IMG/VR virus record: IMGVR_UViG_3300030503_000315
Coordinates: 62,001 to 126,000 of that record
Strand: one strand, 5' to 3'
Length of the DNA: 64,000 bases
The notes beneath the pieces were generated by a model. It searched no databases and had not been told where the DNA came from. It saw only the letters and a list, made by a program, of their open reading frames with translations. The translations under genes and the position numbers were made by a program. Shown piece by piece: positions 4,607 to 57,185 of the stretch. Each line of letters opens with the position of its first letter. Position 1 is the stretch's first letter.

Positions 4607-5400
4607 GTCTCCACTTCATCTTCGCTACCATCGGTTAACATATCCATATCATCCCCGGTAAGAATGGAATCCATTGGGTCTTCAAGAACACTCATGACCA
4701 TACCTACTCGCTGCACCTTCTCTTCAAATTCTACAGACTCCTGATCCAGCTGTGGTCCACCAAACATGTTGGCATACATTGCTTCTTCCGGCGGGATGAA
4801 ATTCGGACCCTTCAGGAATTTTCCGTTAGCGTCTTTAATAGGATTACCATCTTCACCCAGCTTGGTGAAATTCGAACCCATAATGATGGCCAGGTTCTGT
4901 TCGTGCGGTAGGCCAAACTTCAGCGCTTCAGAACGAATGTAGACATTCATATCACCAAGCCAGTCGGCAAGCATTACCAGGATCTGACGATCCACCTCAT
5001 CTATGCCACCATCTTCCCACGCGATAGAAAGGATGTCTGATATCTCAATTGCGCGTTTCGGTTCGATACCAGCTGTGATGGCGTCATGTTGAAGATTCAA
5101 TCCGTCCCACACCGTCGCGCTTTCTGTGCTGAGTGCGATCTCACGCTTGTCCAACACGAATTCGATTTCCTTACCTTCCTTCATTTCCTTCTCGAGTGTC
5201 TTGAGAAAGCCTTGCACACGCTTCAGCGGTTGCTCGTTAAGGTGTTCGGCAGAGAGCGTCGGAGCCGAGTTGATTGGCAGTTCGTAAATCTCATTCTGCT
5301 TCTTGATCGCCCACAGAAAGTACGACGACGCGGGTACGCCGGACTCTTCAAACTCATTCGAGAGACGACCAACCAGGCTTGTGAATTTATCCAGATCCAT
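4600..5400 (-). CDS. MazG/PRA-PH-like all-alpha NTP pyrophosphohydrolase
   Basis: EKEMKE and LADWLGD acidic motifs plus the family tail SNFTKLGEDGNPIKDANGKFLKGPNF; long insertion between the two motifs. Confidence 0.78.
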   Translation of the reverse strand: MDLDKFTSLVGRLSNEFEESGVPASSYFLWAIKKQNEIYELPINSAPTLSAEHLNEQPLKRVQGFLKTLEKEMKEGKEIEFVLDKREIALSTESATVWDGLNLQHDAITAGIEPKRAIEISDILSIAWEDGGIDEVDRQILVMLADWLGDMNVYIRSEALKFGLPHEQNLAIIMGSNFTKLGEDGNPIKDANGKFLKGPNFIPPEEAMYANMFGGPQLDQESVEFEEKVQRVGMVMSVLEDPMDSILTGDDMDMLTDGSEDEVETW

Positions 5401-5457: not shown

Positions 5458-6329
5458 CTACCAATCAATACTCGTATGCACCTGTAAATATCTGCCACGA
5501 TCAACCAAAGGTATTTCAAATAGCCAGACAAGAATATCCGTCTCATCCAAGGATGTACAGACAACTTTTTCCTCAAACTTATCAACCAAGATATATTGAT
5601 CCGGATAATTCCTCTTCCACTCTTCATGCCGATCAAGCATATCCGCGATAGGATGCGCGAACCACTTAGGGCTATTGTTCTCTACATCCAAAGCTGCAGC
5701 TTTAACCTGTACGGCGGTAAGTATGGAGATCACAGTTCTCAAATCTCCAACTGAGACCTGCGTAGAGGCACCAGACCCCATGAAGTGAAGAGCGATGTCT
5801 CCGTCCTCCATGGCATCTTCAGCTAACTCTTGCTGCGCCTCGATCATTGCCCACCAGGTGGCGAAGCTTGAGATAGCTTTATGCTCTTCATCTGTAAGAG
5901 TAAGAAGATTCACTAGTCTATCATTTTTAACTTTGGTCATTGCTACTCCTTGAGGTTGAATGCGTGCATGAGGATGAACCTTGCTTCCTCGATCAACTTC
6001 TCTTTCTCTTCAATGTATCCCTCGTCCCCCCAGAAATGTAGATCGAATTCTTCCTCAGTCCACTTGGGATATTCTTTAAACTTTAACGCTTTTGCCGACT
6101 TCTCCGCCATCTTTTTGATATGGGACAGCATCGTCACATCTTCTTCCAGGAAATAGAGGGGACGGTGTGCACCTAGGTTTTCCCAACCTACGCACGGTTG
6201 GAAGTACCAACCAGAGTGTGAGTTATGGTTTATGTATCCCGCGAACTTATGTACCCACTTTTCTATAGGAGCTCTACGCGGGGGAGGTGGATCTGGTTTC
6301 CACTTTGACTCCGGAGGAATTCTAACCAT
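5458..6329 (-). other. Two hypothetical CDS (5458..5940, 5943..6329)
   Basis: Tiled minus-strand ORFs with SD-like sequences; no motif recognised. Confidence 0.65.
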
Positions 6330-50620: not shown

Positions 50621-50923
50621 CTATCTCTGCTCCAGGCGCTTACTCAATCGAATGTATACCGTCGCGTACAAACCAGTAGGATCGCAGCCGGACGCGCGGT
50701 TCGCAAGCGCAACATTGTCGATGCCGTTCGCAACGAACACCCCATAGTAGTACGCGACCTTCAACACCTTTCGATATCCATCCACGAGAACGTACTCACC
50801 AACGCGTGGGATTGCCAGAGCGTCCTGGATTGTGATCGTTGCTATACCACCGAGCTTATCGCTCATCGGAATTTCGTAGTCTATCTGCATGTCACACCAC
50901 GGTGAGTTCCTGATTATCTTCAC
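50621..50923 (-). CDS. Hypothetical protein
   Basis: Coupled to the topoisomerase A-subunit stop. Confidence 0.5.
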   Translation of the reverse strand: MKIIRNSPWCDMQIDYEIPMSDKLGGIATITIQDALAIPRVGEYVLVDGYRKVLKVAYYYGVFVANGIDNVALANRASGCDPTGLYATVYIRLSKRLEQR

Positions 50924-52412
50924 GATCCTGATACGTCTGATCCTTCAGGACGAGATCGCGAACGCGCAGCACGTCGAGTAGCACCTTCTCTCTTGGTTTC
51001 TTCACCCACGCCTGCAGCTGCTTCAGCAACGTTTGCTGCTCCTTCAGTTTCGCCTTGTACTCGTTCTGGTTCAGCTTCGAGATTTTGCGCAGCTGCAGGT
51101 CACAGACCAACTTCGCCTGTTCTATAGTGATCTTCAGCGCTTTCACCAATGCTGCCTCAGGGTCCTCAGACTTCCGAATCGTCTTGATGATAAGATCAAT
51201 GTGATCCGCGGCGTAGATCATGAGCTCAGAGTACGCTATGTCACGTTCGGTATACGAGATGCGATACGCCAAGCTGCGCAACTCAAGCTTCATCCTCTCC
51301 CGAAGCCACGCAATAATCAACTGCGGAACTGACAGAGCTTCGATCTTCGTATCGAAACTGACAACGCCATCCTCGATGCTGGAAGTCCGTCTCGTCACAT
51401 TAATCTTGAACGGGCGACGTTTGACTGTTGCCTTCTGCACCTTTGCCACAAACTTATCAAACTGATCGAAGTTATACGCGGGCTTGCACACTACAGTGAA
51501 GGTAGTCGAACCTTCGGAGTTCAAGCATGTCAAACACTCGGGCATTTTCCGCACAGCTTCGGTGAACTTCTCAAGATCAGTTCCTGGTGGCCAATCGTTG
51601 ATGACGATACGTTTGCTGTCCCGATCGACCTGAAGATCAGACTCGAACTGTACACTTGCATAAGGTGAGGTGAACAACTGATTCCACTGTGCCTTGTTCT
51701 CTTTCGATTGAACAAGTTGCCCGCCCCAACGATGGCTGAACTTCAGCGTCTTGGCAAAATCCAGCGGCTGCAGTTTCTCACCCTTCAGCAATCTTTCAAT
51801 TACACTCACGACCGACACTGCAGTGAATGTTGGGATCATCGTGTTGATACCCACGCCGATGCCTTCGCCACCATTTAGAATGATGTTGGGTAGCTGTGCT
51901 GGCAGGGTGACTGGCTCGACCCACTTGTCATTGTAGTTGGGAACGAACGACGTTACTTCTTTCGCAATGTAATCCGGCTCCAGAAATGACAAGCCGTAAT
52001 CCGTCAGCTTGCACTCTGTGTATCGATACGCAGCGGCGCCGTCAACCATCGATCCCCAATTGCCACGACCGAAGATAGATGGAGTCGGCATGTTGACCAT
52101 CGTTACCATTGCGCCGTAGATAGAACCATCGCCGTGTGGGTGAAGTTTACCGAGAACGAATCCGACATGCTCACCAGCTTTCTGAATCGACTTCCCACCA
52201 TTCGCCGACATGCCCCAAAGAATGCGCCGATGCACCGGCTTCAAACCATCGAACAGATCCGGAACCGACCGATCCAGATTGGTCGTCACTGCGTATGTTG
52301 TCATGTTGCGTTCGCCAAATGAACGCAACGTTTCATTCTTCAAATGCTTATCTTCTTCCGGCACTAGACTACGTTGCTTGGTCGAGGCACGCTTCTTAGT
52401 TACCATGGTCAC
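50892..52412 (-). CDS. Type IIA topoisomerase subunit A (GyrA/ParC/T4 gp52-like, no beta-pinwheel CTD)
   Basis: DGLKPVHRRILW, HPHGD.SIY, AAAYRYTE (catalytic Tyr), P..LPN...NG..GI.VG. Confidence 0.93.
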   Translation of the reverse strand: MTMVTKKRASTKQRSLVPEEDKHLKNETLRSFGERNMTTYAVTTNLDRSVPDLFDGLKPVHRRILWGMSANGGKSIQKAGEHVGFVLGKLHPHGDGSIYGAMVTMVNMPTPSIFGRGNWGSMVDGAAAYRYTECKLTDYGLSFLEPDYIAKEVTSFVPNYNDKWVEPVTLPAQLPNIILNGGEGIGVGINTMIPTFTAVSVVSVIERLLKGEKLQPLDFAKTLKFSHRWGGQLVQSKENKAQWNQLFTSPYASVQFESDLQVDRDSKRIVINDWPPGTDLEKFTEAVRKMPECLTCLNSEGSTTFTVVCKPAYNFDQFDKFVAKVQKATVKRRPFKINVTRRTSSIEDGVVSFDTKIEALSVPQLIIAWLRERMKLELRSLAYRISYTERDIAYSELMIYAADHIDLIIKTIRKSEDPEAALVKALKITIEQAKLVCDLQLRKISKLNQNEYKAKLKEQQTLLKQLQAWVKKPREKVLLDVLRVRDLVLKDQTYQDREDNQELTVV

Positions 52413-55072
52413 GCCGCCTTCTTAAGTTTGGGTTTGACTCCACGCTTCTCTGCTGCCAGGTCCCGAATTGCGTCAGATATAGGACCGAGTCGCGCAACGC
52501 CTTTCCGTGGTACAGATTTCTTTACTGTTTTCTTCGCTGCGACTTTACGTGGTGGCTTTTCCTGTTCCTCATCGTCCTCTGAAACATCCGAGGCTGAAGG
52601 CAACCCAAAGATCTTCCGGCGATACGCAACGTCTTCGTCCATAAGTTTGACGAACTCGACTTTGTCTTCCTTCTCGATTGCTGAGATTCGAATTAGGCGA
52701 CGCGTCTGCGGGTCGCACGCAAGAATGCGCAGCAGATTCTTCGGAGCTTCCCCCCACCCCTTCAGGTGATTGATCTGAACCGAGGCCGGCGCCTTCAGCT
52801 TCGCCAACTTCTTCTTCATGATCGATACAGTGTCCGCTGTCACCAGTTGCGCTTTGTAGATCGAGTAGAACTCGGGGATCGCCGACACATACACCATCCC
52901 TCTAGCAAACAATTCAGGCAAGTACTTGTAGAACAACGTCAGGAGCAGTGAATTGATGTGGCAGTTGCTTGACACAATACCAGAGGGTAACATGAAGTTA
53001 TGATACCTAGGTACTGTCAAACAGTACACCGGTACGGGTTCGTTCAGATGTTGAACACGCAACTTGCTAACTGCGAAGAATCCTTTGCCCGTCATTCGAT
53101 CAATCAGATCCTTTGCTTTCCCAGTTGCTTCATTTTGAGGCGCATACACCCGATCACCAATTCGCATATCTTCTGCACGAATGTATGCCAGATTTTGGCT
53201 GTACACCTGATAGATACGATCACGCACTGCCGGGGTTCGCACGACCAGGAATTTGTGATTCAAATCGACTTTGTACTTGTGTCCACCAATCTCCATCGAT
53301 ACGAGCGTATCGACATTCTTCTGCAATGAAGCACTTGCAGGTTTCCACTGTAACTCTCCACCAGCCCACACAGGCACGGCGAAGGTTACGCCGGCCTCCG
53401 CAAGGTGCTGAATTGATCGCTGCTGTGATTTGGTGCCATCCAATCCTCCCATCGCAGGAGGTCTGAAGGAAATCAATGTTTCTCCAACGAACGGTCCATC
53501 CGGATCTGGGTCAGCCAGACAAATGATCTTTCCCATAGTCAGCTTCGAGTACGGGTCGGCCGCCTTCGGATCATACCCGATTGCTGCCAGGATGTTAATC
53601 ACTTCCTCAGAATCAAGAGGTGTCTTTTTCTTCGTCGGCTTCAGAGCATTCATGATCTTGCCACGCAACGGCAAGATAGCCTGATACGCGAACCGCGCTT
53701 CCTTTAGCTTGCCCGTCGCAGAATCACCTTCTGTGAGGAAGAGTTCGCGATCATGCACCTTCGTCTTCGGATCGAACCCTGCATATTTTGCAGGCAGACC
53801 CATGCGCTTGACCTTGTTCAGATCAGCAGCGTTCTTCTTCGACATGTTGAACTGATTGCGCGCCTCATTGACTTTCGTCGCCTTGTCGCACAACCTTTGT
53901 GCCATTGCCTTGTTCTCTTTGAAGAACTTTGTTGCTTCGACAATGAGCTTGTCTTCCAGACCTTTGCCCATACGTTCATCCGACAGGAACACCTTGTCCT
54001 GAGAATTGAACTTTGCCTTGTGCAACTTGGCATTGACGACGCCAACCAGACCTTCTTTCAAATCGACTTCGCGGAATACAGGGACGAGTTTGCCGTCGAC
54101 CTTACGTGTCTTGATGTACGGCTTCAATGCCTGATACAGAGCGCCCGTTACTGAGTCAACGTGCTTACCACCCTTGCTATTGAAAGAACCATTAGTGAAC
54201 CCACGAAGGTCGCAGTCGCCATAGTCAGAAAAAGCAACCACGACATCAGCCGCGTGAGGATCCCCATGAACAGACTTGTACTCGAAGATCGTCTTCTCCG
54301 CCTGTGCCTTGAGCTTTGCAAGACGCGCATCAATGTACTCCTTAACTCCAGCCTTGGATAGATACTTCTTTTCGCTTTTAGCTGACTTGATGCGTATCGT
54401 CACACCCGGGTTGAAGTACGCCATCATCTCTGCCCATTCCAGCGCCATTTGCGTCGGAAACTTCGAGCTAGAGAAAATCGACATGTCGGGTTTGCAATGA
54501 ATCAGCGTCCCGGACTTCACCACGCCTTCAGGTCCGCGCGGCGCCTTGCACTTCGACACCGGGGTAACAAGCACACCCTTCTTGAACCCTATGGTGTACC
54601 ACTGACCTTCGAAAAAGGTGTAGACCGTGAAGTACTCACTTGTCGCGTTGGTGCCCTTGCTGCCGATGCCATGCGTCCCGATCGACACTTCATATGCTGC
54701 GGTGTCGTACTTGCCAGACGTATTCAGTGCTCCGAATACAGCTTGCATGGTCGACATCTTATTAATGATATCTTTGCCGTTTACGTGAATCTTTGTCTTC
54801 GTAACCCCCTGTGGTACACCATGCCCCGCATCGCTTACCCAGAACGATCCGTCCTTGTCCAGGTATAGACCGACCATATCATTCCGGCCGGCCAGCGCTT
54901 CATCCAAACCGTTGTCGAGAAGTTCTTTGATAATCATCCACAGGCCGTAGCTATCGGTGCCGCCAATGTACTGGCTAGCATTGCGACGCACCGACTCAGG
55001 GAAGACCAGACTCTTGATATTAGCTGAAGTGTACTTCGCGACTTTCTTAGCTGCTACTTTTTTGATTACCAT
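52409..55072 (-). CDS. Type IIA topoisomerase subunit B (GyrB/ParE-like) containing an intein
   Basis: GHKL motifs ELLDNGLDE, DAGHGVP, GTHGIG; Toprim TEGDSA, PLRGKIMN, DPDPDG; KGWGE. Confidence 0.93.
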   Translation of the reverse strand: MVIKKVAAKKVAKYTSANIKSLVFPESVRRNASQYIGGTDSYGLWMIIKELLDNGLDEALAGRNDMVGLYLDKDGSFWVSDAGHGVPQGVTKTKIHVNGKDIINKMSTMQAVFGALNTSGKYDTAAYEVSIGTHGIGSKGTNATSEYFTVYTFFEGQWYTIGFKKGVLVTPVSKCKAPRGPEGVVKSGTLIHCKPDMSIFSSSKFPTQMALEWAEMMAYFNPGVTIRIKSAKSEKKYLSKAGVKEYIDARLAKLKAQAEKTIFEYKSVHGDPHAADVVVAFSDYGDCDLRGFTNGSFNSKGGKHVDSVTGALYQALKPYIKTRKVDGKLVPVFREVDLKEGLVGVVNAKLHKAKFNSQDKVFLSDERMGKGLEDKLIVEATKFFKENKAMAQRLCDKATKVNEARNQFNMSKKNAADLNKVKRMGLPAKYAGFDPKTKVHDRELFLTEGDSATGKLKEARFAYQAILPLRGKIMNALKPTKKKTPLDSEEVINILAAIGYDPKAADPYSKLTMGKIICLADPDPDGPFVGETLISFRPPAMGGLDGTKSQQRSIQHLAEAGVTFAVPVWAGGELQWKPASASLQKNVDTLVSMEIGGHKYKVDLNHKFLVVRTPAVRDRIYQVYSQNLAYIRAEDMRIGDRVYAPQNEATGKAKDLIDRMTGKGFFAVSKLRVQHLNEPVPVYCLTVPRYHNFMLPSGIVSSNCHINSLLLTLFYKYLPELFARGMVYVSAIPEFYSIYKAQLVTADTVSIMKKKLAKLKAPASVQINHLKGWGEAPKNLLRILACDPQTRRLIRISAIEKEDKVEFVKLMDEDVAYRRKIFGLPSASDVSEDDEEQEKPPRKVAAKKTVKKSVPRKGVARLGPISDAIRDLAAEKRGVKPKLKKAA
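52964..53494 (-). mobile_element. 177-aa mini-intein (Hint domain, no homing endonuclease), class-3-like
   Basis: Begins PFVGETL, block B DLNHKF, block F VYCLTV, ends GIVSSN followed by +1 Cys; removal restores DPDPDG-CHINSLL. Confidence 0.88.
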
Positions 55073-55075
55073 GGC

Positions 55076-56337
55076 TCACTCGGCAGAGTTTTCCTCATTA
55101 TACGGATCGAGATTGGGTACATTCATCAATGCATGTACAAACGGAAGGACATTCGAAAGCTCGGTGATATTGCACTTGGCAGAATGATACGGAGACCACG
55201 AACCTCCTTTGGACAACTCAAGGAGGAAGTGTACGTATCCAGGTTCTATGTACTTGGGTGGGCGCTCCATGCCGGGAGCTGACTTGCCATACACTACTTT
55301 ACCTTTCGGATTATCGAATGTCAACGAGATCCGAATACGCCCCAGCTTCCACTGCACCTTAGGCAACACCTGTTCGTCAGCTTCGAGATTTATGATAGGC
55401 ATCTTGTTGCTATCGAACTTGAAGTCGACGTGAAACTTAATCCGCTTACCCGACGCAGATTCCGAGTACTGTGGAGTGTACGCGAATCCCCAACGAGAGA
55501 AGAAGTTGTGCAGGAGCTGCTCCAGCTTCGGCATAGCTTCCTTCGCGGCCTTGATCTTTTCGGGATCTGTAGCTAGGAATGTCATCTCAGAATTAGAGAT
55601 CAGACACTTGCCATACTTCTTCTTCCACGTCGCGGCTAACATCTCCACAAACGGGTCCATCAATTCTTCCTCGAAAGGAACTTCCTTCCCTACAATACCA
55701 TGAGACTTTGTGATTAGTCTCAAGGTAGGGATAAACGTGTGATGGATTCGTAGAAGTGGAACTCCCAGCTTCTTCAACGTCTTGTACGTCTCGAAGTCAA
55801 CCGGGAAGTACCACTGCTTGATACGCGTCAAACGAATCTCATTGGGATCGAGATTCGACTTGACTTCCTCAGGCTCTGGTGGTGGGGCCGGGATCACTTC
55901 TACCACTTCCTTGCCATCTTCAACTTTCAACTCTGCTTGATTTACTACAGGCAACTTCAACCTCTTCTTGATTGAAGTCTTTGATGCGGGTTTCGTTTCC
56001 GCTTTTGCCTTCATTGGTCGACACCTCTGTCTTTGGATTCAAGGTAGTAGTAAAAGCGCTCGATGAACGCCGGGCTTTGCTTATTAACAAGTTGTAGCAC
56101 ATTCGCTTCAGCTACAGGGTTTCTGGAATTTCTGGCTGCCATCACCTGCTTGGCATATTTCCTTGCGCGGCCGACAACAATGATCTGAACTTCGCCCGCC
56201 GGGCAATCCTCGTTCCCTTTCGAGAAATGACATTTCGCATACTTCTTGGGTTCATCGGGGTCCAGGTGGCCGCACTTTTTGCACAGCGGGCTGTAAACCT
56301 CGAGATAGTCCTTGTTATCCACTTTACCACCTCTCAC
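55076..56337 (-). other. Two hypothetical CDS (55076..56014; 56011..~56320 with Cys/His motifs)
   Basis: Tiled ORFs upstream of the topoisomerase genes. Confidence 0.65.
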
Positions 56338-56417: not shown

Positions 56418-57185
56418 TCAGAAGTTGTCGAGGTCTTCCTCTTCTTCTTCCTCTTCTTCCTCTTCTTCCTCTTCTTCCTCTTCTTCCTCTTCTTCCTCTT
56501 CTTCCTCTTCTTCCTCTTCTTCCTCTTCTTCCTCTTCTTCCTCTTCTTCCTCTTCTTCTTCCTCTTCTTCTTCCTCTTCTTCCTCTTCTTCCTCTTCTTC
56601 CTCTTCTTCCTCTTCTTCTTCCTCTTCTTCCTCTTCCTCTTCTTCCTCTTCTTCGTCAGCCACCGGTGCTGCTGCGACGCCGCCCGAGGTCACGAAGATG
56701 TACGAAGGATCCGAGGCGATGACATTACCCGACTCTTCGGTCACGTACACCGTCTGGTTGTTGCGCTCTTCGATGCCGGTGATGGTACCCAGAAGTTCAA
56801 GAGTTTCATAAACAATGACGTTACCGACCACAGCCTTGACACGAGTCCGTGGGATAATCACGTCGCCCACGCCATAGTACGTTGTAGCTGTCGGCTTCTT
56901 AGCCGCCTCAACACGGGATTGAACCTTGAGGAAAACCTGCTGACCAACAGTCGAGGCAACAGCTGCAGCAACCTTCGTCTTCTTCACGACCTTTTCCGGT
57001 GCAGCCTTCTTTGCTACAGTCTTCTTAGCAGCAACCTTTTTAGCTACGACCTTCTTCGCAGCAACCTTCTTGGCAGGAACTTTCTTTGCTACAGTCTTCT
57101 TAGCAGCAACCTTCTTCACTGCAGCCTTCGCTTTCGTGCCGGCCACCGTCTTTGCTGCTTTCTTTGCTTTCGTACCAATTGCCAT
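56418..57185 (-). CDS. H1-like basic N-terminus, small globular core and a 73-residue poly-Glu tail
   Basis: KKVAAKK repeats in about aa 1-75; aa 178-250 are all Glu. Confidence 0.82.
   Translation of the reverse strand: MAIGTKAKKAAKTVAGTKAKAAVKKVAAKKTVAKKVPAKKVAAKKVVAKKVAAKKTVAKKAAPEKVVKKTKVAAAVASTVGQQVFLKVQSRVEAAKKPTATTYYGVGDVIIPRTRVKAVVGNVIVYETLELLGTITGIEERNNQTVYVTEESGNVIASDPSYIFVTSGGVAAAPVADEEEEEEEEEEEEEEEEEEEEEEEEEEEEEEEEEEEEEEEEEEEEEEEEEEEEEEEEEEEEEEEEEEEEEEEEEDLDNF
56436..56654. repeat. GAA/GAG trinucleotide tract (mostly 9-bp GAAGAGGAA units on the minus strand), 219 nt
   Basis: Read directly from the sequence. Confidence 0.97.

What the first reader, a model, noticed from the sequence alone, without database searches (positions are those of the whole stretch)
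52964..53494. Atypical class-3-like mini-intein splitting the Toprim DxD motif of the topoisomerase B subunit
Seen: a 177-aa Hint domain inserted at DPDPDG|CHI. Residue 1 is Pro rather than Cys/Ser, block F has Cys at F4 (VYCLTV), and the end is VSSN-C. Known: class 3 inteins lack the N-terminal nucleophile (the mycobacteriophage Bethlehem DnaB intein starts with Pro) and use a Trp(B12)-Cys(F4)-Thr(G5) triad. Here B12 is Phe (NHKF), G5 is Ser, the block B Thr is replaced (DLNH), and the penultimate His is Ser, so two of the three signature residues deviate. There is no homing endonuclease. Inference: a variant splicing chemistry or a conditional, for example redox-sensitive, switch gating phage topoisomerase activity.
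Basis: partly seen in the sequence, partly recalled or inferred. Interest (0 to 1): 0.75.

Follow-up and report, generated by a model that had tools for sequence, protein, structure and literature searches.

The report
Pro-start class-3-type intein, phage topoisomerase
A jumbo phage's essential DNA topoisomerase gene carries a 177-residue self-excising protein insert (an intein) that lacks the usual first cysteine and almost certainly starts splicing from an internal cysteine; it belongs to a large, previously undescribed family of such inserts at this one site.

Summary
Window 52964-53494 (- strand) encodes a 177-aa HINT domain. It sits between Gly526 of the Toprim DPDPDG motif and Cys704-His-Ile of an 887-aa phage topoisomerase II large subunit. 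An intein-free relative reads DPDPDG-CHIN without a break.

It is not a one-off. About 110 non-redundant metagenomic and phage proteins (phiRSL1, BcepSauron, BcepSaruman) carry a homologous insert at the same site. Among 107 mini-inteins:
- Pro1 in 103
- His B:10 in 107
- Cys F:4 in 106
- Ser G:5 in 102
- Asn G:7 in 107
- Cys+1 in 105
- G:6 is His in only 4
- B:12 is Phe (54) or Trp (49)

Intein-free relatives have H, G, W, S or C at the +1 position. The insert is under purifying selection, and four relatives still hold an HNH homing endonuclease.

The best reading is an active, constitutive mini-intein that uses the known class 3 route (Cys F:4 first, then Cys+1). Nothing supports a new chemistry or a redox switch.

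What is new is the family: a new host protein and site, its own signature, and sequence closest to class 1 inteins. Position 1 has switched between Pro and Cys within the family.

The parts
52409..55072 (-). Gene for the topoisomerase II large (GyrB-like) subunit precursor, 887 aa and 98.1 kDa, including the stop codon
   Evidence: ORF list. Pfam DNA_gyraseB, Toprim, DNA_gyraseB_C and HATPase_c. 54-62% identity to the topo II large subunits of phiRSL1 and BcepSauron/Saruman.
53495..55072 (-). N-extein, aa 1-526: ATPase and transducer domains plus the first part of Toprim (Glu448; DPDPDG 521-526; Gly526 is residue -1)
   Evidence: Pfam ranges; alignment A1; codon map.
52964..53494 (-). Mini-intein, 177 aa, 19.7 kDa, HINT fold, no homing endonuclease
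53492..53494 (-). Pro1 codon (block A:1). The scissile bond is Gly526-Pro527.
   Evidence: Pro in 103 of 107 family members. Aligns with residue 1 of solved inteins.
53249..53257 (-). Block B: His80 (B:10), Lys81 (B:11), Phe82 (B:12)
   Evidence: His in 107/107; Lys or Arg in 87/107; Phe 54, Trp 49, Leu 4. His aligns with the block B His of Pho RadA.
53021..53023 (-). Cys158 (F:4), the proposed first nucleophile and the only Cys in the intein
   Evidence: Cys in 106/107. Aligns with the F:4 Asp of the Pho RadA intein. Cys count.
52964..52972 (-). Block G: Ser175 (G:5), Ser176 (G:6, in place of the usual His), Asn177 (G:7, cyclises)
   Evidence: G:5 Ser in 102/107; G:6 is S, A, K or G, with His in only 4; Asn in 107/107.
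52961..52963 (-). [quoted passage not shown]
   Evidence: Cys in 105/107 intein-bearing proteins. Intein-free relatives have H, G, H, W, S or C here.
52412..52963 (-). C-extein, aa 704-887: the rest of Toprim (starting C-H-I-N-S-L-L-L) and the GyrB C-terminal domain
50892..52412 (-). Topoisomerase II GyrA-like subunit gene (506 aa). Its start overlaps the stop of the large-subunit gene.
   Evidence: ORF list. PHROG 551, DNA topoisomerase II, E = 4.8e-84.

Best explanation
This is an active, probably constitutive, cis-splicing mini-intein that works by the class 3 route. It has long been resident in the topoisomerase II large-subunit gene of a phiRSL1-like jumbo phage.

Proposed steps (all inferred from the residues, none shown directly):
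1. The 98-kDa precursor is made with its Toprim domain interrupted just after DPDPDG, and is presumably inactive.
2. The thiol of Cys158 (F:4) attacks the Gly526-Pro527 bond. His80 (B:10) helps; Ser175 (G:5) holds His80 in place and Phe82 (B:12) packs behind it. The N-extein now hangs on Cys158 as a branched thioester.
3. The N-extein is passed to Cys704 (+1).
4. Asn177 cyclises and releases the 19.7-kDa intein. The usual penultimate His is absent, so Lys81 (B:11) and His165 in block F are the likely helpers.
5. An S-to-N shift gives the native Gly-Cys bond. The 78.4-kDa product reads DPDPDG-CHIN, as in intein-free relatives.

The intein has lost the HNH homing endonuclease that basal relatives still carry, and it is now inherited mostly with its host gene.
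For: Shown here:
- The insert is a HINT fold with exact intein boundaries.
- Pro1 rules out a class 1 start.
- The residues class 3 chemistry needs are invariant or nearly so across 107 homologues that are as little as 24% identical: His B:10 107/107, Cys F:4 106/107, Asn G:7 107/107, Cys+1 105/107, Ser G:5 102/107.
- Cys at +1 goes with the intein. Five of the six intein-free relatives have H, G, H, W or S there; only BCSR5 has Cys.
- The insert is under purifying selection: pN 0.19-0.25 against pS 0.71-0.79, and omega 0.13 in the intein against 0.14 in the extein for the P0001/P0049 pair.
- The intein has diverged about as much as its host protein among the window phage, phiRSL1 and BcepSauron: 54-56% identity against 55-64%.
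- Its GC3 follows each host genome.
- Relatives with an HNH endonuclease pass Pfam's intein cut-off.
- Position 1 has switched between Pro and Cys within the family while Cys F:4 stayed fixed.

From the literature:
- A Pro1 intein (MP-Be DnaB) splices efficiently through Cys F:4 (PMC2807308).
- In the class 3 Bvi IcmO intein, Cys+1 cannot replace Cys F:4 (PMC5222942).
- AceL NrdHF splices fast without Trp B:12, the G:6 His or the F:13 His (PMC7891396).
Against: - There is no biochemical evidence of splicing for any member of this family.
- I could not inspect model coordinates, so the distance from Cys158 to the scissile bond was not measured.
- Trp B:12 and Thr G:5 of the canonical triplet are both replaced in the window.
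- The family profile finds no natural class 3 structure in the PDB even at E <= 10, whereas class 1 inteins score down to 8e-13. Structural Z-scores are also higher for class 1 (about 17) than for class 3 (14.4-14.8). Membership of the canonical class 3 lineage is therefore not shown.
- Close class 1-type relatives (Cys1, ending H-N) also have Cys at F:4, so Cys F:4 alone does not prove the route.
Confidence: 0.72

Rival explanations
1. Class 2-like route: Cys+1 attacks the Gly-Pro bond directly, as in the Ala1 KlbA inteins. Cys158 would only assist, in the role Asp F:4 plays elsewhere.
For: Cys+1 is present in 105/107 members, whereas canonical class 3 inteins mostly have Ser or Thr at +1 (PMC5222942). 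The family is closer in sequence to class 1/2 inteins, and Mja KlbA (2jmz) appears among the profile hits at E = 0.075.
Against: Cys F:4 is as invariant as the terminal Asn (106/107), while KlbA uses Asp at that position (PMC2807308). [quoted passage not shown] The near-invariant Ser at G:5 matches the class 3 Thr that holds His B:10.
Confidence: 0.1
2. One reading: the intein is a conditional switch. Splicing would be held back by oxidation (a Cys158-Cys704 disulfide) or by metal binding (Cys158, His80, Cys704, His705), gating topoisomerase activity during infection.
For: Both catalytic thiols must come close together in the active site. The class 3 Msm DnaBi1 intein is reversibly blocked when its catalytic Cys forms a disulfide (PMC6195587). 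The intein sits in the active-site domain of an essential replication enzyme.
Against: No family-specific feature points to regulation. The intein has only one Cys, and no conserved partner Cys like Cys48 of DnaBi1. Any Cys-dependent intein is to some degree sensitive to oxidants. A lytic jumbo phage needs its topoisomerase quickly. The conservation pattern is fully explained by the need to splice.
Confidence: 0.1
3. The insert does not ligate. Either it stays in the mature enzyme as a tolerated domain, or it only cleaves and leaves a two-piece large subunit that reassembles, as T4 gp39 and gp60 do.
For: Splicing has not been tested. The window's Pfam intein score is below the curated cut-off. 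T4-like phages tolerate a large subunit split within Toprim (bioRxiv 10.1101/2022.08.31.505936).
Against: Catalytic residues are invariant over deep divergence, and omega is about 0.13. Cys+1 is needed for ligation but not for cleavage, yet it is kept in 105/107 intein-bearing proteins and is variable in intein-free ones. A 177-aa domain placed next to the metal-binding DxDxDG would probably disrupt Toprim; this point is an inference.
Confidence: 0.06

Closest known systems
Mycobacteriophage Bethlehem DnaB intein (MP-Be DnaB), the class 3 prototype
   Same: Starts with Pro1, has Cys at F:4, His at B:10 and a terminal Asn, and comes from a phage. It was shown to splice through a block F branched thioester (PMC2807308).
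   Different: MP-Be has the canonical W-C-T triplet, a penultimate His, Thr+1 and an endonuclease domain (reported in PMC2807308). It sits in a helicase, and most such inteins lie in an ATPase P-loop. The window intein has F-C-S, Ser at G:6, Cys+1, no endonuclease, and sits in Toprim. No sequence relationship to solved class 3 DnaB inteins was detectable.
AceL NrdHF split intein (PDB 6ZGQ), an atypical class 3 intein from a phage-like contig
   Same: No Trp at B:12, no penultimate His, and a basic residue at B:11 (Arg69 there, Lys81 here). Block F has C-L-S-V-P where the window has C-L-T-V-P, and the end is V-T-G-N where the window has V-S-S-N. It was shown to use the class 3 route and to splice within minutes.
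   Different: It is naturally split, starts with Ala1, has Ser+1, Met at B:12 and Thr at G:5, and its host is a ribonucleotide reductase. Structural match is only Z = 14.6, and the family profile does not find it.
Burkholderia vietnamiensis IcmO intein (Bvi IcmO)
   Same: A class 3 mini-intein with Cys at +1. It shows that the order Cys F:4 then Cys+1 is obligatory (PMC5222942).
   Different: It has the canonical W-C-T triplet and a plasmid-borne IcmO host. [quoted passage not shown]
Mycobacterium smegmatis DnaBi1 intein (PDB 6BS8)
   Same: A class 3 mini-intein with D-x-x-H in block B. It is the precedent for redox control through the catalytic Cys (PMC6195587).
   Different: Its disulfide partner, Cys48, lies inside the intein, and the window intein has no second Cys. 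It has the W-C-T triplet. Z = 14.4.
Pyrococcus horikoshii RadA mini-intein and Ssp DnaB mini-intein (class 1)
   Same: These are the closest solved relatives by sequence (E = 8e-13) and by structure (Z about 17, rmsd 2.0-2.3 A), and they align end to end.
   Different: They have Cys1, Asp at F:4 and H-N at the end, and they use the class 1 mechanism.
Class 1-type inteins in related phage topoisomerases (P0023, P0026)
   Same: Two of them (the P0023 intein starting at residue 809 and the P0026 intein at 910-1050) occupy the same junction after DxDxDG. Inteins at other sites in the same two proteins share the block F/G wording P-V-Y-C-x-x-V ... H-N-F and have Cys at F:4. Some carry the same HNH_3 type of endonuclease.
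   Different: All start with Cys1 and end in H-N. The two at the Toprim junction have Asp at F:4. They fall outside the Pro1/Cys F:4 clade (support 99/95).
T4 gene 39/60 split by the MobA element
   Same: Another mobile element that interrupts the Toprim metal-binding region of a phage topo II large subunit.
   Different: The solution is different: two polypeptides plus translational bypassing, with no protein splicing. I did not map its exact site against this one.

Membership tests
Intein (HINT superfamily, protein-splicing) | HINT fold inserted in frame in a conserved site of a host protein, and precisely absent from some homologues | tested here: met
   pLDDT 91.9. Z = 17 to mini-inteins, aligned end to end. 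Exact gap in BCSR5 and in five IMG/VR relatives.
Intein (HINT superfamily, protein-splicing) | Block B His, C-terminal Asn, and Cys/Ser/Thr at +1 | tested here: met
   His80, Asn177 and Cys704 are present. Across the family they are in 107/107, 107/107 and 105/107 members.
Intein (HINT superfamily, protein-splicing) | Pfam Intein_splicing (PF14890) gathering score | tested here: not met
   30.9 bits against a cut-off of 35.8 for the window intein. HNH-bearing family members do pass, at 37-50 bits.
Intein (HINT superfamily, protein-splicing) | Excision with ligation of the exteins actually occurs | not testable with these tools
   Needs a splicing assay or proteomics.
Class 3 inteins | No Cys/Ser/Thr nucleophile at position 1 | tested here: met
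   Pro1; Pro in 103/107 of the family.
Class 3 inteins | Cys at block F position 4 | tested here: met
   Cys158 aligns with the F:4 Asp of Pho RadA. Cys in 106/107.
Class 3 inteins | Trp at B:12 | tested here: not met
   Phe82 in the window. Family: Phe 54, Trp 49, Leu 4. In the census of 1702 class 3 inteins, 8 have Phe at this position (7 FCV, 1 FCS).
Class 3 inteins | Thr at G:5 | tested here: not met
   Ser175 in the window. Family: Ser 102, Thr 1, so the hydroxyl is retained. WCS and FCS triplets are on record.
Class 3 inteins | Block F branched thioester forms before the block G branch | not testable with these tools
   Needs trapping of intermediates in C+1A and N177A mutants.
Class 3 inteins | Belongs to the single (monophyletic) class 3 lineage described in the literature | tested here: inconclusive
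   The profile finds no natural class 3 structure at E <= 10 but many class 1 inteins. Z is 14.4-14.8 for class 3 against about 17 for class 1. No broad intein phylogeny was built.
Class 2 inteins (KlbA type) | No N-terminal nucleophile, Cys+1 attacks directly, Asp at F:4 | tested here: not met
   F:4 is Cys, not Asp. The route itself cannot be tested here.
Bacterial intein-like (BIL) domains | HINT domain in variable, non-essential proteins without a conserved +1 nucleophile | tested here: not met
   The host is an essential enzyme, the site is conserved, and Cys+1 is kept in 105/107. BIL structures match only at the level of the fold.

The most novel reading that the evidence does not exclude
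The Toprim-site family may be a second, independent origin of class 3-type splicing. It would have arisen from class 1-type phage inteins that already had Cys at F:4, with living intermediates still around.

Evidence in favour:
- The nearest outgroups have Cys1, Cys F:4 and a final H-N.
- Within the family, Pro1 and Cys1 forms are interleaved while Cys F:4 stays fixed. An AU test rejects a single Pro1 clade at p = 0.021, with the caveat that I named the group after seeing the tree.
- No specific similarity to canonical class 3 inteins is detectable.

If true, this contradicts the published argument that class 3 inteins cannot evolve directly from class 1 (PMC7664689). It would also supply natural sequences for retracing that path at the bench.
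Probability: 0.35. Interest if true: 0.72.

Novelty: new variant of a known kind. Interest (0 to 1): 0.5.

Why it matters
- **New host and site.** When class 3 was defined, all known members sat in helicase-like ATPases, mostly in the P-loop (PMC2807308). This family puts the same catalytic layout into the Toprim domain of a phage type II topoisomerase.
- **Its own signature.** Pro1, Phe or Trp at B:12, Cys at F:4, Ser at G:5, no His at G:6, and Cys+1.
- **Missed by the census.** The largest class 3 survey (1701 inteins from NCBI nr, June 2020) does not list the phiRSL1, BcepSauron or BcepSaruman proteins. Public records call them plain topoisomerases.
- **Annotation.** These "GyrB-like" proteins are about 20 kDa shorter when mature than annotated.
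- **Mechanism and evolution.** The family offers about 100 natural variants of the class 3 active site, including Pro1/Cys1 pairs. These can test what makes an internal cysteine a competent first nucleophile, and whether class 1 and class 3 inteins can convert into one another.
- **Protein engineering.** A compact class 3 intein with Gly at -1 and Cys at +1 may be a useful ligation tool.

Tried and rejected
1. A single-sequence PDB search with the intein gave only a weak Pho RadA hit (E = 0.002). The family profile was needed.
I rebuilt the alignment without that row.
4. I looked for the phiRSL1, Sauron and Saruman accessions in Table S4 of Hoffmann et al. None was found. One other BcepSauron protein (QBQ74860.1) is listed, but PF14890 did not find it in that genome, so it could not be used as a canonical class 3 comparator.
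5. Literature searches for an intein in phiRSL1, in BcepSauron or in a phage topoisomerase Toprim domain found no description of this element. Tori & Perler 2011 is not held in the library.
6. dS is saturated for window-versus-relative pairs, so omega is defined for only one pair in the intein. I report pN against pS instead.
7. A homing endonuclease in the window intein was rejected.
8. A second intein elsewhere in this phage genome was rejected at the sensitivity of PF14890.
9. The gene upstream of the topoisomerase gene (55076..56014) has no PHROG match.
10. I did not run a read-level check for intein-free alleles.
Full report
**Context**

The window is bases 62001-126000 of a 215,315-bp virus record that is about 91% complete. 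The same gene, 100% identical, is on a second IMG/VR contig (L009).

The ORF at 52409..55072 on the minus strand encodes 887 aa with DNA_gyraseB, Toprim, GyrB C-terminal and GHKL ATPase matches. Its stop overlaps the start of a 506-aa GyrA-like subunit gene at 50892..52412 (PHROG 551, E = 4.8e-84). The nearest cultured relatives are the jumbo phages Ralstonia phiRSL1 (62% identity) and Burkholderia BcepSauron and BcepSaruman (54%). This is therefore the large subunit of a phage type II topoisomerase.

Translating 52964-53494 (minus strand) gives 177 residues, from P-F-V-G-E-T to V-S-S-N, followed by Cys.

In a five-way alignment, phiRSL1, BcepSauron and BcepSaruman carry a homologous insert at the same place. 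Burkholderia phage BCSR5 lacks it exactly and reads DPDPDG-CHINSLL. Five more IMG/VR relatives also lack it.

- Pfam scores the insert as Intein_splicing at E = 2.8e-7, under the curated cut-off, and finds no endonuclease family.
- A profile of 21-22 family members finds solved inteins down to E = 8e-13.
- An AlphaFold2 model built on that alignment has mean pLDDT 91.9 and pTM 0.87.
- The model superposes on class 1 mini-inteins at Z about 17 and rmsd 2.0-2.3 A. Pro1 falls on their residue 1 and Asn177 on their last residue.

The block assignments follow from the Pho RadA alignment, where V-Y-D-L pairs with V-Y-C-L and L-H-N pairs with S-S-N. So Cys158 is F:4, Ser175 is G:5, Ser176 is G:6 and Asn177 is G:7. 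His80, Lys81 and Phe82 are B:10 to B:12.

It does not fall between the aspartates.

**It belongs to a large family**

An exhaustive phmmer search of 1.84 billion representative proteins found only 48 hits at E <= 0.001. Most were topoisomerase subunits with an insert at the same DxDxDG junction. A word-indexed search of 5.8 billion proteins added about 90 clusters.

I extracted 111 inserts at this junction. Of these, 107 are mini-inteins of 141-221 aa and four are 442-455 aa. Three of the four long ones were scanned and all hit the HNH_3 endonuclease family and pass Pfam's intein cut-off; the fourth (P0130) shows an HNH-like motif.

Counts among the 107 mini-inteins:

| Position | Residues |
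|---|---|
| A:1 | Pro 103, Cys 4 |
| B:7 | Ser 48, Asp 32, Thr 18, Ala 9 |
| B:10 | His 107 |
| B:11 | Lys 75, Arg 12 |
| B:12 | Phe 54, Trp 49, Leu 4 |
| F:4 | Cys 106, Asp 1 |
| Block F His | His 84, Gly 23 |
| G:5 | Ser 102, Cys 3, Thr 1, Val 1 |
| G:6 | Ser 59, Ala 16, Lys 14, Gly 14, His 4 |
| G:7 | Asn 107 (my junction search also accepted Gln or Asp) |
| +1 | Cys 105, Ser 2 |

The window's combination (Pro, Phe, Cys, Ser, Ser, Cys) is the second most common, with 27 of 107.

**Evidence that it is functional**

1. The catalytic set is invariant across members that share as little as 24% identity.
2. Cys at +1 is tied to the insert. The six intein-free relatives have His, Gly, His, Trp, Ser and Cys at that position. 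The Cys in BCSR5 may be a relic of precise intein loss; that is my inference.
3. Selection is purifying. Against the two closest relatives whose DNA I fetched, the intein shows pN 0.19-0.25 against pS 0.71-0.79. For the P0001/P0049 pair, omega is 0.13 in the intein and 0.14 in the extein.
4. Among the window phage, phiRSL1 and BcepSauron, intein identity (54-56%) is close to extein identity (55-64%). Across 94 proteins, pairwise intein and extein identities correlate (Spearman 0.68, though the pairs are not independent).
5. The intein's GC3 follows each host genome, from 0.49 to 0.81.

Together these indicate long residence and a requirement to keep working. In an essential enzyme whose Toprim domain is interrupted, that means splicing.

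**Most likely mechanism**

Pro1 cannot make the class 1 acyl shift. Two known routes remain. In class 3, an internal Cys at F:4 attacks the N-terminal junction, and the N-extein is then passed to the +1 residue. In class 2, the +1 Cys attacks directly (PMC5222942; PMC2807308).

The invariance of Cys F:4 favours class 3. Three precedents agree:
- The Pro1 MP-Be DnaB intein splices through Cys F:4.
- In Bvi IcmO, Cys+1 cannot substitute for Cys F:4.
- In AceL NrdHF, Thr at G:5 hydrogen-bonds to His B:10. A Ser could do the same.

For Asn cyclisation without a G:6 His, the best candidate helper is Lys81. In AceL NrdHF the B:11 Arg contacts the C-terminal scissile carbonyl, and mutating it slows splicing. 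B:11 is Lys or Arg in 87 of 107 members here.

All of these steps are inferred. None was observed.

- Phe and Trp alternate at B:12 within one family.
- Ser at G:5 is conservative.
- FCS (1) and WCS (3) triplets already appear among 1702 class 3 inteins.
- D-x-x-H is the usual block B motif of class 3 DnaB inteins, and B:7 is not conserved in the class.
- Phage inteins often replace the penultimate His with Gly, Lys or Ser.

There is therefore no need to invoke a new chemistry. A redox or metal switch cannot be excluded, because Cys158 and Cys704 must approach each other. But the intein has no second Cys, and no family-specific feature points to regulation.

**Relationship to known classes**

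By the working definition (no Cys at position 1, Cys at F:4) this is a class 3 intein. By descent it is not demonstrably part of the canonical class 3 group.
- The family profile finds 41 PDB sequences at E <= 10. All are class 1, class 2 or BIL domains (one is an engineered gp41-1 variant). None is Msm DnaBi1, Mch DnaBi1 or AceL NrdHF.
- Structural Z-scores are also lower for those three, at 14.4-14.8.

In a careful tree of 31 inteins:
- The Toprim-site Cys F:4 family is one clade (support 99/95).
- Its basal part holds all the HNH-bearing members and four members with Cys1 plus Cys F:4 (P0020, P0125, P0129, P0133). These are nested among Pro1 members in well-supported clades.
- An AU test rejects a single Pro1 clade (p = 0.021), with the caveat that I named the group after seeing the tree.
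- The outgroup consists of class 1-type inteins from related phage topoisomerases. Three of them, at other sites in those proteins, also read P-V-Y-C at block F but keep Cys1 and a final H-N.

This pattern fits a path from a class 1-type intein with Cys at F:4 to an obligate internal-cysteine intein. That is notable because Beyer et al. argued such a conversion is improbable. I give this reading a probability of 0.35. The alignment is short (158 columns), and no canonical class 3 sequences were in the tree.

**Novelty**

- Public records name these proteins only as topoisomerases.
- The three proteins that were in NCBI nr in 2020 are absent from the census list.
- Text searches found no description of an intein in phiRSL1, in BcepSauron, or in a phage topoisomerase Toprim domain.
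- When class 3 was defined, all members were in helicase-like proteins.

I therefore rate it as a new variant of a known kind. The chemistry is known. The host and site, the signature and probably the lineage are new.

**Verdict**

| Reading | Confidence |
|---|---|
| Active mini-intein using the class 3 route | 0.72 |
| Class 2-like route | 0.10 |
| Adaptive conditional switch | 0.10 |
| Non-ligating insert | 0.06 |

Interest: 0.5.

Noticed in passing
window 56418..57185 (-), poly-Glu run at 56436..56654: A 255-aa ORF with a Lys/Ala-rich repeat N-terminus (A-K-K-V-type repeats) and an unbroken run of 73 glutamates near the C-terminus. It has no PHROG match.
   Followed up: no
window 52964..53494 compared with the rest of the gene; L024 and L025: The window's extein is closest to P0049 (dN 0.085), but its intein is closer to P0001 (dN 0.21 against 0.30). 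In the window, intein GC3 is 0.49 against 0.62-0.65 in the extein. This suggests the intein or part of the gene has been exchanged by recombination, even though it has no endonuclease of its own.
   Followed up: partly
L019:2998-6134: In this IMG/VR relative the large-subunit gene is in two ORFs. ORF1 ends at 4668 just after an intein block B (T-P-D-H-Q-F). ORF2 starts at 4845 with blocks F and G (V-Y-D-L-T-V ... V-V-H-N then Ser). It looks like a naturally split class 1 intein, lying upstream of the Pro1 intein in the same gene.
   Followed up: no
P0039 and P0028 (ATPase-domain site); P0023 and P0026: Related phage topoisomerase subunits carry more inteins. One is a class 1 intein in the ATPase domain, between S-I-G and T-H-G-V-G. 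P0023 and P0026 hold three inteins each, some with HNH domains.
   Followed up: partly
L001:2423-2965 and 5622-5975 (phiRSL1): phiRSL1 has a free-standing HNH-AP2 endonuclease gene (ORF332) directly upstream of the intein-bearing gene. It also has a small ORF334 between the two topoisomerase subunit genes. L024 has a similar 122-aa ORF; the window has neither.
   Followed up: no
L004:2962-5091 (Burkholderia phage BCSR5): This intein-free relative still has Cys at the empty site (DPDPDG-CHIN), whereas other intein-free relatives have H, G, W or S. It may be a scar of precise intein loss.
   Followed up: partly
P0131, P0132, P0134: A divergent subgroup of Pro1 / Cys F:4 inteins ends in L-C-H-N, with Cys at G:5 and a regained His at G:6, and has a longer stretch between blocks F and G.
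   Followed up: no
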